From Haliotis cracherodii (taxonomy: Eukaryota): 64,000 bases of DNA. This document shows positions 5,325 to 54,346 of the stretch, piece by piece; position 1 is the stretch's first letter; each line of letters opens with the position of its first letter. Location: positions 24,180,001-24,244,000 of the forward strand of contig NW_027266273.1 of assembly GCF_022045235.1 (NCBI RefSeq). Reading direction: 5' to 3'. The position numbers and the translations under genes are program-made. The notes beneath the pieces are model-generated. The model was not told the DNA's origin. It was given only the letters and a program-made list of their open reading frames with translations, and made no database searches.

Positions 5325-6368
5325 CTACATTAACATTTCAGTCTCGTTGTTTGGCGCAACAGAGCCTTTCATTTTGTCCATAGCTACAATGATAATCTTA
5401 ACAAGAAAAAAGCTGATCTCCATCCCAAGGGGAATTAACGTTAAGATTGTGTTTAGGTTTGTCCGTCCAATGTTTGCATCCACTACTGAAACAATAATAA
5501 TTAATTTTGCAATGTAAGTACTAAAGGTGTACTCACTAAACTTCCTGACCACAAAAATGTCAATAATGTCAAGCGTTGTCAATAGGACAATAAGAAACCC
5601 CAATGATACGCATCCGCCTGCAACTGGCCCCAGTGGCGTGCTGGACAGGGTGGTCATCACCATAGCTAGGGTGAACAGTGCATTACCAAGAATCCAGGTC
5701 GCAAAGGCACCAATGGCATTCTCAACAAATAGTATGAACAGCACGTTGTCAACATGCCGTCCCTGCTTCTGTAGCTCGAGCTTGTGTTCGAACCTTGTTC
5801 TGTAGCTGAGGACGAGGCACGCGTAGTAACCGAGCTCCGAACCTAGAAGGAAGACGAAGGCTAGTTCCAGAGCCTGTCTATCGATGAGAAACAGCCAGCC
5901 GATGTAGAGTAGATCACCCAGGATGTGCACCCAGAAGAAGGCGGGGGTGAAGAGGACGGGGTGGAGGTAGAGAGGCCCATCGGGGCCCTTCCTACAGATC
6001 AGGGTCAGCGAAAAGATGAGCCAGAGAATTTGAAGAGCATATAAGAAGGCAAAGACGTAGATAGACCATCGGGCTTTCCTGAACACGTTGTTATAAAGGT
6101 TGAACACATTGTTTGTTGTATCCAGGAAAATGTCTGAAATTTGATATCAAAGAATTCAATTTTTTACACAAAAATGTACAGCATGTATGGAATCCTTGAG
6201 TATACGTTATAATATTTCTTACATGTACCAAGAGATGGTACTATGGGTGGACTGAGTGTAATTACCTGATCCTCCAAGCTCGGCAAAGAAGGTGAGTATG
6301 ACTGACACCACAAACACAAGCAGGGTCGAGACGTTGAGAAGAATCAGGGAGGTGCCCGACCACTTCAT
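5325..6368 (-). CDS. Paralogue A: ~8-TM TSPO/MBR-like membrane protein (303 aa), most divergent copy
   Basis: Coding exons 6368-6266 (MKWSGTSLILLNVSTLLVFVVSVILTFFAELGGS) and 6133-5325; phase-1 GT-AG intron 6265-6134; 912 nt, no internal stop. Upstream acceptor (ttttgttacttag) at 6385/6384 implies a 5'UTR exon. Aligns to B-E (ICRK.P.GPLYL.P, W.FL.DR, F.EN, Y.FS.Y). Confidence 0.88.
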
Positions 6369-6686
6369 TGTAAATGAGGCTCACTAAGTAACAAAAGATA
6401 ACACGTAGAGGAACAACCATTTGAGTGAGCGAATGATTAAAATGTAAGGTTGTATCAGCATTAATTCAGTCATATAGCGACGACAACACGTTTCAATATC
6501 CAACGCATGCCAAAAAGATACATCACTGATTTAATAACAATATTTCAGTACAACAATGCTCAACAGTGCGTTGGATTAAAACAATAGCTGACGATAGTTA
6601 CCTCGATTATGATAGGTATTTCATGTCACACAGAGGCACAATCACGTTAACTTCCAAAAAGTAGAGACTTCAATTAGATGCCTTGG

Positions 6687-7500
6687 TAAAGTGAAGTGGT
6701 AACATGTTGGTAACATGTTGGCAAAGTGAGTGGACTGGGGAACGTACAAGGAACATGTTGGCAAAGTGAGTTGGCTGGGGAACGTACAAGGAACACGTTG
6801 GCAAAGTGGGTGGACTGGGGAACGTACAAGGAACATGTTGATAAAGTGAGTGGACTGGGGAACGTACAAGGAACACGTTGGCAAAGTGAGTGGACTGGGG
6901 AACGTACAATGAACATATTGGCAAAGTGAGTGGGCTGGGGAATGTACAAGGAACATGTTGGCAAAGTGAGTGGACCTGGGAATGTACAAGGAACATGTTG
7001 GCAAAGTAAGTGGACTGGGGAACGTACAAGGAACATGTTGGCAAAGTGAGTGGGCTGGGGAAAGTGAGTGGACTGAGTAGCTTACAAGAAATATGTTGGC
7101 AAAGTGAGTGGACTGAGTAGCTTACAAGAAATATGTTGGCAAAGTGAGTGGACTGAGTAGCTTACAAGGAACATGTTGGTAAAGTGGGCGGACTGGGGAA
7201 CGTACAAGGAACATGTTGGCAAAGTGAGTGGACTGGGGAACGTACAAGGAACATGTTGATAAAGTGAGTGGACTGGGGAACGTACAAGGAACACGTTGGC
7301 AAAGTGAGTGGACTGAGTAGCTTACAAGGAACTTGTTGGCAAAGTGAGTGGACTGGGTAGCTTACAAGAAATATGTTGGCAAAGTGAGTGGACTGAGTAG
7401 CTTACAAGAAATATGTTGGTAAAGTGAGTGGACTGAGTAGCTTACAAGAAATATGTTGGTAAAGTGGGCGGACTGGGGAACTTACAAGAAACATGTTGGT
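6687..7500. repeat. 40-bp minisatellite (~20 units, two variants)
   Basis: Unit ggcaaagtgagtggactggggaacgtacaaggaacatgtt; variant ...gactgagtagcttacaagaaatatgtt dominates the distal part. Explains ORFs 6642-7632. Confidence 0.95.
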
Positions 7501-51205: not shown

Positions 51206-52375
51206 ACAATTGAAAGACAATACACAATTCAATGACAGTAAAAGCACAATAGCAATATTAAATATGAAAGCAGTGGTGATAGAAAATGTCAGTGATGATA
51301 ATATTAACCAAGCAGCAACAGTGGTCAAGCACGTTCTTGTTCTCTTATTTCCCAAAATCCAATCTGGAAATTTTCACAAAGTGCCTGACCAGTCTAGAGG
51401 CACTGGAACATTACAGAAGATTCTAGATCACTCTTGACCACACAACCATCTAAATATAGCAACTTCCACAACGCTGATTACATAGTGCTACATTCCTGAC
51501 AACTGATTATTGTCCAAACACAATGCCATAAACTTCCACTAAATGTAACTTATATACTACAATTGTAACATTGTTCAACAATAAGTTACCCTGCAATATG
51601 ACAATAATGTAACTAGGAAATTAAGCTCACAGTCGTAGCAGTTAAATACAAGATCTGTTCTGGGTGGAATTGGGTTGATCGCATTCACTGGAGCGATGCA
51701 GAACACGGCCCTTTGTAAGGCTAAACTGTATGTTGCCGTTTCCTTTCGAGATTTTAGTACAAATTAAATGCAACGGAGGATGTGTGTTGTTACATAAAGA
51801 TCTATAATCGGATTATATCTGGTACGAATTGATATACAACCGTGATGTGTAATCGGCCGTAGCGGCTCGCCAGTGGAGGGAAGCAGTACGGGTTCACCAC
51901 GAAGAACACCACAACGCAAATTGTGAAACATTTGGAAAAATAAGACCTTTATTTCTATCAAAGGTAGGTGATATACGACTATACGCTGACATTACATTAA
52001 AATGAAAAAAAATAATACCATGAAAAACACATAACACAGGCAAGTTACAGGCACACATTACAGGATGGATGAGTGTTGAGTCAAGTATTACAAAGTCAGT
52101 AATTGCAGTAATGTCTTTGGAAGTGTGAATGAGGCTGGTATGGCGGTGCAGGAACACACCAGTGTCCAACAGGGTGAGCATCATTGTCCAATGGGTCACC
52201 ATAGCAACCTCACTATAACATAGAAGGTTAACCAGCCGGGGATGGTATCAATCCTAGAAGTGCATAAAAAACAAAGTCCATGGTGATGTACTCGCTCATA
52301 AGGGATAATGCCCGTTTTGAGGTAAAGGGAGATCTTCAGATATTGTCATCATGTGTGTGTTTTAACTTGGTGACT

Positions 52376-54346
52376 TCACGCTGTTCCGCCTTGCGTTGAC
52401 TCTGTCGTTGGAATGAACACTTTCTGTCTGCCTGTGTCCCGGAAGTGACGCCACAACATCACGATCATCTTCACGACTAAACAAAACACCGCCATACCCA
52501 GCAATACAGCAGTGAAGATCGAGTTCCGCTTCTCAGGATTCCAGTTCTTAATGATACTCCCGGAAAGGGCGATAATCACGACGATGTACTCGCTGAATAT
52601 ATACCTCGTATACTTGTCCAGTACGGTCCAGTCTGAGATGGAGAAGACCACAAGCTCCACGGCCAGGATACTTAATGCGATTGTGCTGGACGTGCTCTGG
52701 TCAAATCTGGGGTGTTCGCCGTAGGTCAGGGCAGTGGCCACGTTCAGGAGAGTAGCAATGGTGCACCAGGCTCCGTAAAACGCCAGTCCGTTTTGAACAA
52801 ATGCCCGGATGAGCCAGATCTCCTTTTTCCGCTCTTGTTTGATGAGTGTCTCGGAGTGCTCAGCCAGGGCTTTGCAAGAAAGACCAATGAGTGTGTATAT
52901 GGAAATAGCGGTGAGAGCCAGAAACACAAACGACGCCCATACTAGCTCCCAGCACCACAGGAAGGTCCAAGAAATGACGATAAACCAGTTGAGGATGGAG
53001 AGGCTGAAGAAGGTCGATGTGAGCAGGGCGGGGCTGTTGTAGACGTAGCCGTCGGGGGCACGGCGGCAGATGTTGACGAGGGCGTAGATAATCCAGATAG
53101 CCTGCCACACGTAGATGGCGCCCCAGATGCTAAAGGTGGGACCAGAGGGCGTGATCTCGAGCATTAGTTTGTCCGAGATGTTTCCAATCGTATTTGGGTA
53201 GAGCTCTAAAACATACAGCAACAGCACAATGTCAGTTTTCTGCTTCAATATTCACAGCTTTTTGGCATCGGCCCGTCGAGAAAAAAAAGTAATTATGCTT
53301 TAGACTAGCTGTAAACATACCAGCCCCCTCCCCTCACCCCCAGAATATCTAATTTGAGTAGTATATATTACAAATCCAAGTGATTCCATCAGTGCCGGAC
53401 ACTGGCTGTCATGGCTATCTTCGGTAAAGGGTCCCCCTGCGCCGTGGCAATGTTCCTTGGGTTGACAGCAAAATACCAGTGTTAAGGGCTGTCAGACAAG
53501 GGGGAAACGTGGCGTGTAAGTAAACTCGGGCTTTTCTCCCACATTAAGCTGACACGTCGCGATGTAACTAAAATACTGTTCAAAGTGATGAGTTACAAGT
53601 CCTTAAAAAGTGATAAGGAAAAGCTGGAAGGACGCTAGGAGTAGTACAAGTGTATGCCATGAAACCTACAACGAAAGGTATGGTGGCGACAGACTTATCG
53701 TCCTAACCCATGACCAGCGGTTCCCACCATAAATAGCGGGCCTTTAGACTACCTGTAAGTTGATGATCTATAGTGAAGAAAGTTCAGTGTTGCAATTTGC
53801 TATACAGGAGCACGTTTGACACTTATGCCTAATGTATAGTTGTTTGAAAGCACACAACCAAAGTTATGGGGGCGAGAGATGAATGGTTTTATCTTGGAAT
53901 TGAAAAGGGTCCAACTCTGCACAAACCTTTGCGGCGGTTTAGGCAACGATACCACAATTGCTTCCCCATTCCCCATAAATAAGAATAACACTTTACTAAG
54001 GAAACCAACACATTCGTCTAACATTTGGTAATTAACTATGACGCTGGATTTTGCAAGTTAGACATTATTGGGCTGATGAAAAACAGATAGGAGAAAGAGC
54101 TGCATGCCGTACTTGTGTTACAGCTGGTAGATATGAAAACGTTCGTCACGTGATGCGTATAGTTTCTTTGTTTGAAACCACATAGAACCTTGTCATGTGT
54201 TTAAATGATACATGTGAGGGTCACGTACTTAAGTCGATCCCCAGAAACTCCCTGGTGTTGCCCAGGAGACTGAGGAACTGGTTGGCAAGGAAGGCCACCA
54301 AGTTGCCGACCATCAAGGCAATGAGGAACGGCGAGTGTCCAGCCAT
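52376..54346 (-). CDS. Paralogue E: ~8-TM TSPO/MBR-like membrane protein (315 aa)
   Basis: Coding exons 54346-54229 (MAGHSPFLIALMVGNLVAFLANQFLSLLGNTREFLGIDL) and 53205-52376; phase-1 GT-AG intron; 948 nt open. Motifs EITPSGPTFSIWGAIYVWQ, QNGLAFYGAWCTIATLLN. Closest to D (GHSP, ISDWT.LDKY). Upstream acceptor at 54372/54371. Confidence 0.92.

What the first reader, a model, noticed from the sequence alone, without database searches (positions are those of the whole stretch)
5325..54346. Five-member tandem cluster of intact, strongly diverged 8-TM TSPO-like proteins
Seen: five open spliced ORFs (303-337 aa) with one shared phase-1 intron after TM1 and about eight hydrophobic segments, all intact while nearly all neighbouring transposons are decayed. 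Known: TSPO/MBR proteins have a P..W..LY motif in TM2, LN..W...F in TM3 and Y..W...A..LN in TM5, and bind porphyrins/tetrapyrroles and sterols. These motifs appear here in the same order (TPAGWTFSIWGLIY, LNISWLLLF, YAAWTTIASFLN), followed by three extra helices. From memory they resemble an uncharacterised family that includes zebrafish si:ch211-161h7.5 and bacterial tryptophan-rich sensory proteins; not verified. Inference: a lineage-specific expansion of a small-molecule binding or transport family with diversified pockets. A role in pigment (tetrapyrrole) or lipid handling is a testable but speculative idea.
Basis: partly seen in the sequence, partly recalled or inferred. Interest (0 to 1): 0.75.

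Follow-up and report, generated by a model that had tools for sequence, protein, structure and literature searches.

The report
Abalone array of eight-helix TSPO-like genes
An abalone chromosome carries a row of intact, diverged genes for membrane proteins that are distant, longer cousins of the porphyrin- and sterol-binding protein TSPO; the family is widespread in animals and bacteria, but no study of its function turned up.

Summary
The window has five complete genes of 303, 337, 314, 319 and 315 aa. All have GT..AG introns and a shared phase-1 intron after the first helix. Paralogue 4 has an extra phase-2 intron. Both of its introns are spliced out in one contig in 4 of 4 RNA-type runs.

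The TSPO reading is supported as distant homology, not as membership:
- None of the five ORFs hits Pfam TspO_MBR, but 15 of 48 family members do.
- 12 of 20 columns conserved in both families carry the same residue.

- The array has eight members, three of them outside the window, and the genome has about 14 loci.
- It is not one lineage-specific burst.
- Paralogue 1 has lost half the signature residues.
- The family spans many animal phyla and some bacteria.

Function is untested. A tetrapyrrole-type ligand pocket is inference. Other notes of this scan touch the same window (an intron and a minisatellite), not this family on other DNA.

The parts
5325..6368 (-). Paralogue 1 (303 aa). Exon 1 is 6368..6266, the intron is 132 nt, exon 2 is 6133..5325. 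This is the most diverged copy: the TM2 signature residues P, F and W and the TM5 Ala are replaced.
   Evidence: The model matches the 303-aa H. rufescens protein P0382 across the junction.
21038..22657 (+). Paralogue 2 (337 aa). Exon 1 is 21038..21140, the intron is 606 nt, exon 2 is 21747..22657.
   Evidence: It has the same length and junction as H. asinina P0029. It keeps 28 of 30 family-conserved residues.
29773..31675 (-). Paralogue 3 (314 aa). Exon 1 is 31675..31567, the intron is 958 nt, exon 2 is 30608..29773.
   Evidence: Exon 2 is 98.6% identical to H. rufescens LOC124128680 (P0001). It keeps 30 of 30 conserved residues.
42845..47095 (-). Paralogue 4 (319 aa). The ATG exon is 47095..46949 with ATG at 47078. 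Intron 1 is 2178 nt. Exon 2a is 44770..44629. An extra phase-2 intron of 1096 nt follows. Exon 2b is 43532..42845. The contigs continue upstream of 47095, so there is a further 5' exon outside the stretch that was laid.
   Evidence: In each of 4 of 4 runs one contig shows both joints, 43531|44628 and 44770|46949.
45340..46954 (.). A 42-bp minisatellite (38.6 copies) inside intron 1 of paralogue 4. It starts directly at the exon-1 donor.
   Evidence: It is not part of the coding sequence.
52376..54346 (-). Paralogue 5 (315 aa). Exon 1 is 54346..54229, the intron is 1023 nt, exon 2 is 53205..52376.
   Evidence: It keeps 26 of 30 conserved residues. Its exon 1 resembles that of paralogue 4 (GHSP.LI...SLG.T).

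Best explanation
These are five of eight tandem, functional paralogues of an ancient, uncharacterised family of roughly 300-aa, eight-helix membrane proteins (the fish 'si:ch211-161h7.5' family).

Shown here:
- Helices 1-5 form a TSPO-type five-helix bundle. It keeps the TSPO signature residues: P, F, W and Y in TM2; N and W in TM3; Y, W, A and L in TM5.
- Helices 6-8 are an added module. The module is also present in bacterial relatives.

Inferred:
- The Trp-lined TSPO-type cavity binds a hydrophobic planar small molecule inside the membrane, most plausibly a tetrapyrrole (porphyrin, haem or bilin) or a sterol-like lipid.
- The paralogues offer varied pockets. Paralogue 1, and its sister gene outside the window, replaced the TM2 half of the signature and probably changed ligand or role.

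How the array arose: by repeated tandem duplication over a long time. Some duplications are older than the abalone genus and one pair is recent. Purifying selection followed.
For: Real genes:
- All five reading frames are intact with canonical splice sites.
- Annotated orthologues of the same length exist for paralogues 1, 2 and 3.
- Spliced contigs of paralogue 4 appear in 4 of 4 runs.
- Of the 24 coding differences listed, 11 are synonymous and 13 are not, over 234 synonymous and 723 non-synonymous sites, a ratio of about 0.38.
- dN/dS is 0.17 for paralogue 5 against its neighbour, and 0.47 and 0.51 for the two recent pairs.

Family:
- 261 homologues at E<=1e-3.
- 4176 clusters at E<=1e-3 and 469 at E<=1e-30.

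Link to TSPO:
- 15 of 48 members hit PF03073 at E<=1, best 4.2e-8. Of 8 looked at closely, 7 exceed the 24-bit cut-off, covering profile positions about 18-144 of 145.
- The AlphaFold model has pLDDT 91.9 and pTM 0.89, with 8 long helices.
- hhalign of the family against 29 canonical TSPOs gives E 5.1e-4 over 129 columns, with the motifs in register.
- 12 of the 20 columns conserved at 80% or more in both families carry the same residue.

Bacterial relatives:
- hhalign probability 97.3%, E 1.7e-11, spanning TM2-TM7.
Against: - None of the five window ORFs, nor P0001, hits PF03073 at E<=1.
- A family profile finds no PDB chain by sequence at E<=10.
- Foldseek gives no PDB match at E<=0.001. TSPO 4rym reaches only E 1.5 (probability 0.93, target TM-score 0.65).
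- The hhalign probability against TSPO is only 31%, or 24% in a rerun.
- No ligand, location or phenotype is known.
- Bacterial gene neighbourhoods give no hint.
- Expression was checked for paralogue 4 only, and the runs are labelled 'RNA?' as a guess.
- The selection count uses only the rows listed in a truncated table.
Confidence: 0.75

Rival explanations
1. The resemblance to TSPO is only a generic helical-bundle likeness plus a few tryptophans. On this view the family is unrelated to TSPO and works differently.
Against: Seven family members pass Pfam's curated TspO_MBR cut-off over nearly the whole profile. TSPO ranks first of 48,161 chains, with 147 of 151 residues aligned in order. Of the 20 co-conserved columns, 12 are identical, spread over TM2, TM3 and TM5 in the same order.
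Confidence: 0.08
2. The fold is TSPO-like, but the job is not tetrapyrrole or sterol binding. Candidates are a diversified membrane sensor or receptor, a transporter, or an enzyme. The tandem diversification would then reflect varied external ligands, as in chemoreceptor-like arrays.
For: Tandem arrays and species-specific duplicates recur in many lophotrochozoans and hemichordates: several proteins come from one contig in Lottia, Lineus, Lingula, Owenia, Saccoglossus, Sinanodonta and Potamilus. Three extra helices and a conserved DRY.RYT.TPY stretch have no counterpart in TSPO. Paralogue 1 replaced the TSPO-like TM2 residues yet is conserved among abalones.
Against: No evidence for any specific alternative was found here. 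The residues shared with TSPO are the family's most conserved positions.
Confidence: 0.25
3. The cluster is a single recent abalone-specific burst. Alternatively, some copies, especially paralogue 1, are decaying pseudogenes that happen to remain open.
For: Two pairs are recent: the two copies just past the window end are 96% identical, and paralogue 2 is 94% identical to a copy 1.1 Mb away. Their dN/dS values are 0.51 and 0.47. Paralogue 1 keeps only 14 of 30 conserved residues. A fragment copy, L012, exists elsewhere in the genome.
Against: Orthologues of paralogues 1, 2 and 3 exist in H. asinina at 78-87% identity. The one-clade tree is rejected: lnL is 43 lower and p-AU is 0.012, although the group was named after the tree had been seen. 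Paralogue 1 and its sister are 40% identical yet both are open. Its altered TM2 stretch is nearly the same in three abalone species.
Confidence: 0.07

Closest known systems
TSPO / tryptophan-rich sensory protein (Pfam PF03073 TspO_MBR; structures BcTSPO 4RYI and RsTSPO 8E7W)
   Different: About 300-340 aa and eight helices, against about 160 aa and five. The loop between TM1 and TM2 is longer. The proline-containing stretch after the TM3 tryptophans (NWAWTPIFFG in canonical TSPO) is not kept, and an invariant Asp sits where TSPO has an invariant Gly. The five window ORFs fall below Pfam detection. The same genome has a separate canonical TSPO gene on another contig.
Uncharacterised metazoan family named after zebrafish si:ch211-161h7.5 (for example Scomber P0119 and H. 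rufescens LOC124128680 and LOC124126499)
   Same: Full-length similarity with E from 2.9e-174 to 1.6e-53 across molluscs, annelids, brachiopods, nemerteans, echinoderms, hemichordates, lamprey, ray and teleost. Members have the same length and the same conserved residues.
   Different: Nothing in kind: the window genes are members. What is particular here is the copy number, eight in tandem and about 14 loci in the genome, and the strongly altered paralogue-1 lineage. That lineage was found only in Haliotis: 5 hits among 1617 candidates.
Bacterial 250-285-aa relatives (ORFs in Aeromicrobium L019, Sphingomonas L017 and Syntrophomonas L016)
   Same: The ITPAGWTFSIWGLIY-type motif is nearly identical. 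The alignment runs from TM2 to TM7 at 29% identity, hhalign probability 97.3%.
   Different: They are shorter. The DRY.RYT.TPY stretch is not conserved. They have no NCBIfam model and at best a sub-threshold TspO_MBR hit of 21.8 bits. Their gene neighbourhoods differ from one another.

Membership tests
TspO/MBR (Pfam PF03073) | Match to the family HMM above the curated 24-bit cut-off | tested here: not met
   0 of 5 window ORFs and 0 for P0001 at E<=1. Among relatives, 15 of 48 hit at E<=1, and 7 of the 8 examined exceed 24 bits. The relation holds at superfamily level, not as membership.
TspO/MBR (Pfam PF03073) | Five-transmembrane-helix bundle fold | tested here: met
TspO/MBR (Pfam PF03073) | Conserved signature residues in TM2, TM3 and TM5 | tested here: met
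   12 of 20 columns conserved at 80% or more in both alignments are identical. Paralogues 2-5 keep most of them. Paralogue 1 lost P56, F61, W64, Y77 and A187.
TspO/MBR (Pfam PF03073) | Size of about 18 kDa with five helices only | tested here: not met
   303-337 aa. The model has eight long helices.
TspO/MBR (Pfam PF03073) | Binds porphyrins, cholesterol or PK11195 | not testable with these tools
   This needs binding assays.
si:ch211-161h7.5-like eight-helix family (unnamed in the Pfam and NCBIfam copies used) | Full-length sequence similarity to family members | tested here: met
   A family HMM scores the five exon-2 ORFs from 390 to 180 bits. The search with paralogue 3 finds 261 homologues. 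Paralogue 1 is the weakest at 179.5 bits.
si:ch211-161h7.5-like eight-helix family (unnamed in the Pfam and NCBIfam copies used) | The family's invariant and near-invariant residues (30 positions from residue 47 onward) | tested here: met
   Kept in paralogue 3: 30 of 30. Paralogue 2: 28 of 30. Paralogue 5: 26 of 30. Paralogue 4: 7 of 14 and 18 of 19 in its two exons. Paralogue 1 keeps only 14 of 30.
si:ch211-161h7.5-like eight-helix family (unnamed in the Pfam and NCBIfam copies used) | Phase-1 intron after helix 1 | tested here: met
   5 of 5 window genes. Whether other phyla share this intron was not tested.

The most novel reading that the evidence does not exclude
The eight-helix TSPO-like family is a conserved handler of photosensitising tetrapyrroles that responds to light or photo-oxidative stress, from bacteria to fish. 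On this reading, abalone expanded it to about 14 genes (eight in this array) with altered pockets to deal with dietary or shell-pigment tetrapyrroles and bilins. The only lead is one table: zebrafish si:ch211-161h7.5 is the strongest up-regulated gene (log2FC +4.03) beside per2, cry5, cry-dash, ddb2 and soul5. From my own knowledge, those genes are part of the light-inducible set in zebrafish. That comparison was melatonin-treated against illuminated fish, not light against dark.
Probability: 0.1. Interest if true: 0.75.

Novelty: new variant of a known kind. Interest (0 to 1): 0.42.

Why it matters
TSPO is heavily studied as a drug and imaging target, and its basic function is still disputed. 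A second, longer branch of the same fold, present in many animal phyla and in bacteria, would give an independent handle on what the TSPO pocket is for. I found no functional study of it. The abalone array offers natural variants, including one lineage that rewired half the signature, for comparative binding and structure work. The array itself is an ordinary tandem gene family. The genes are already annotated as 'uncharacterized protein', and one relative already carries an automatic 'tryptophan-rich sensory protein' label.

Tried and rejected
- Pfam on the five ORFs found nothing relevant.
- PDB sequence searches with one ORF and with the family profile found nothing: only two designed proteins at E about 2, then 0 hits.
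- Foldseek against the PDB was not significant.
- hhalign of the family against a single abalone TSPO exon was not significant: E 0.19.
- The ESM Atlas pointed to the fungal family DUF1774 at 0.87, below the tool's 0.9 lead threshold. DUF1774 is not among the 25 of 32 Pfam families shown for the 48 members. This was left as unsupported.
- Bacterial neighbourhoods gave no shared theme: trypsin-like protease, MipA, HSP20, ATP-grasp/Alpha-E, polyprenyl synthase-NUDIX, GGDEF, Macro and TauE.
- NCBIfam has no model for the family.
- Literature searches:
  - 'ch211-161h7.5' returned 1 paper. I read the passage and section 3.4.
  - TSPO-like / tryptophan-rich sensory protein / eight transmembrane returned 5 papers, seen as listing and abstract starts only. 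None concerns an eight-helix form.
  - PTHR33802 / DUF1774 / PF08611 returned 4 papers, listing only. All are fungal DUF1774 mentions and none mentions PTHR33802.
  - TSPO with abalone or mollusc terms showed nothing relevant in the 15 papers listed.
  - So 'no description in print' rests on these four searches of the held library.
Lists of light-responsive zebrafish genes may hold the gene there.
- The PANTHER name I recalled for the family comes from no call.
- Hydropathy counting was too crude to give a helix number.
- No decayed extra copies were found in the window: the weak HMM hits have E from 0.07 to 9.
- I did not search or fold a joined spliced model of any window gene. Full-length work used the database orthologue P0001, and the window genes were searched exon by exon.
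Full report
WHAT IS THERE

The window is abalone DNA. The best protein hit is H. rufescens LOC124128680. The contig length of the H. cracherodii hit equals that of the window's contig. Five long ORFs of one family lie at 5325..6107(-), 21755..22657(+), 29773..30621(-), 42845..43585(-) and 52376..53248(-).

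I read the sequence upstream of each. Each has a short ATG exon encoding one hydrophobic helix, a GT donor after the first base of a codon, and an AG acceptor in front of the long ORF. A script confirmed five complete reading frames of 303, 337, 314, 319 and 315 aa. There are no internal stops, all introns are GT..AG, and every gene has the phase-1 intron. The exons were joined only inside that script, for counting.

Paralogue 4 differs from the others. Its long exon is split by a 1096-nt phase-2 intron (44628..43533). Its first coding exon (ATG at 47078, donor after 46949) lies 2178 nt upstream, across a 42-bp minisatellite.

EXPRESSION

I could lay reads once and chose paralogue 4. In 4 of 4 runs, from four studies and three coded organisms, a single contig joins 43531|44628 and 44770|46949. 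The skipped ends are CT..AC, which is GT..AG on the minus strand. The contig then runs on beyond 47095, so there is a further 5' exon.

The runs are labelled 'RNA?' as a guess. An intron-less joined form is what RNA would give.

Of the 24 coding differences listed between the window and these contigs, 11 are synonymous and 13 are not. With 234 synonymous and 723 non-synonymous sites, the ratio is about 0.38. That table was truncated, so this count covers the listed rows only.

The models of paralogues 1, 2 and 3 agree in length and junction with annotated proteins of H. rufescens or H. asinina. Paralogue 5 has neither kind of support.

SIZE OF THE ARRAY

A family profile searched against the window's own genome gives 15 matches in 14 loci. 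On the same contig there is one more member about 12 kb before the window and two more 2 kb and 12 kb after it. The tandem array therefore has eight genes over about 90 kb.

Other loci lie at 25.33 Mb (a copy 94% identical to paralogue 2, plus a fragment), at 14.82 and 9.68 Mb, and as a pair on another contig. A canonical TSPO gene sits elsewhere in the genome.

DIVERGENCE AND HISTORY

Exon-2 identities among the five window genes are 27-50%. In a quick maximum-likelihood tree of 63 rows:
- Paralogue 3 groups with its H. rufescens and H. asinina orthologues.
- Paralogue 2 groups with its distant copy and an H. asinina protein.
- Paralogues 4 and 5 and the two genes past the window end form a clade next to two Lottia genes.
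- Paralogue 1 joins the gene before the window, on long branches.

The rows were the 50 named proteins plus 13 abalone exon-2 pieces. The unnamed hits were left out.

Holding all array genes as one clade costs 43 log-likelihood units, p-AU 0.012. The group was named after the tree had been seen, and long branches are present. So duplication has been repeated and partly old, not one abalone burst.

dN/dS is 0.17 for paralogue 5 against its neighbour, though dS is saturated at 1.4. It is 0.47 and 0.51 for the two recent pairs, which rest on few changes.

Several other species also have two or three family proteins on one contig.

PARALOGUE 1

It keeps only 14 of the 30 family-conserved residues examined. 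It lacks P56, F61, W64 and A187. Even so, a search with it finds 303-304-aa orthologues in H. rufescens (94%) and H. asinina (78% and 80%). Its altered TM2 stretch is nearly unchanged among them. That search found only Haliotis proteins: 5 at E<=1e-5 among 1617 candidates. The method needs shared 5-residue words, so more distant kin could be missed.

RELATION TO TSPO

Against:
- Pfam finds nothing in the five ORFs or in P0001.
- PDB sequence searches are empty.
- Foldseek is not significant.
- hhalign probability is 31%.

For:
- 15 of 48 family members hit TspO_MBR at E<=1, best 4.2e-8. Of 8 inspected, 7 exceed the curated cut-off, with the match covering profile positions about 18-144 of 145 on residues about 42-194.
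- An AlphaFold model of P0001 with a 48-sequence alignment has pLDDT 91.9 and pTM 0.89, with eight long helices.
- hhalign against 29 named invertebrate TSPOs gives E 5.1e-4 over 129 columns, with the TM2, TM3 and TM5 motifs in register.
- Of the 20 aligned columns conserved at 80% or more in both families, 12 carry the same residue.

I conclude that this is distant homology to TSPO with an added three-helix module. It is not membership of the Pfam family.

BREADTH OF THE FAMILY

A search with paralogue 3 finds 261 proteins at E<=1e-3. They come from molluscs, annelids, brachiopods, nemerteans, echinoderms, hemichordates, lamprey, a ray and a teleost whose protein is named si:ch211-161h7.5.

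A profile search of 1.84 billion representatives finds 4176 clusters at E<=1e-3 and 469 at E<=1e-30.

Ten bacterial loci encode relatives. ORFs of 250-285 aa in Aeromicrobium, Sphingomonas and Syntrophomonas carry almost the same TM2 motif. The Aeromicrobium ORF aligns to the family over TM2-TM7 at probability 97.3%, E 1.7e-11.

FUNCTION

Nothing is known. Bacterial neighbours differ from locus to locus. The one paper that names the zebrafish gene lists it in a table as up-regulated (log2FC +4.03) together with per2, cry5, cry-dash, ddb2 and soul5 in melatonin-treated against illuminated fish. I read the passage and section 3.4. From my own knowledge, those companion genes are light-inducible in zebrafish. 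This is a lead only.

My committed reading is a TSPO-type pocket that binds a hydrophobic planar ligand, most plausibly a tetrapyrrole, with the paralogues varying that pocket. The fold and the residues are shown here. The ligand is inferred from what TSPO proteins are known to bind.

VERDICT

It is wrong on the array's size and on a single lineage-specific origin, and it is untested on function. The array itself is an ordinary tandem family. The wider interest lies in the uncharacterised eight-helix TSPO-like family as a whole.

Noticed in passing
window 45340-46954: A 42-bp minisatellite (38.6 copies) fills most of intron 1 of paralogue 4. It begins directly at the exon-1 donor, and its unit repeats the donor-like GTAAGT. 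Splicing still uses the first site at 46949 in 4 of 4 runs.
   Followed up: partly
window 44828-45283: A SINE-like repeat in intron 1 of paralogue 4 collects very large summed contig depth (about 1e5) and many odd joints in all four runs. It looks like a highly abundant, transcribed repeat family.
   Followed up: no
L006 and L012 (own genome, same contig, about 1.1 Mb from the window): A copy 94% identical to paralogue 2 (dN/dS 0.47) has a partial copy beside it on the other strand. The partial copy covers profile positions 164-305 only and has one stop.
   Followed up: partly
protein P0004: The annotated H. cracherodii protein nearest paralogue 3 is only 208 aa. It lacks helices 2-4 and has an unrelated stretch in their place, which looks like a mis-spliced gene model. 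Its first 15 residues also differ at two places from the window's exon 1.
   Followed up: no
window 6712-7499, 8624-12474, 13219-13843, 23313-23798, 37948-38406, 41795-42498, 48563-49230, 54401-54657: The spacers between the paralogues are full of minisatellites. The largest is a 31-bp unit repeated about 125 times. One array starts about 55 bp upstream of the ATG of paralogue 5.
   Followed up: no
window 27222-27701; also 19715-20194 and 25322-25858: One ORF is a DDE_3 transposase relic (E 1.2e-9). Two other ORFs, on opposite strands, share a stretch (ILFQFGFGF...FMTYFKRRFYDCLTQYWHFSLTSS), have no Pfam hit, and look like copies of one repeat.
   Followed up: partly
L021 (Brevibacterium album) and L017-L019: The 16-residue TM2 stretch of the animal family occurs letter for letter in an actinobacterial genome and nearly so in Sphingomonas and Aeromicrobium. 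That is unusually strict conservation across domains for a membrane helix.
   Followed up: partly
family alignment A1, P0001 residues about 232-242: A conserved stretch between helices 6 and 7 (consensus LDRY.RYT.TPY, with invariant R237) has no counterpart in TSPO. It is not kept in the Aeromicrobium homologue.
   Followed up: no
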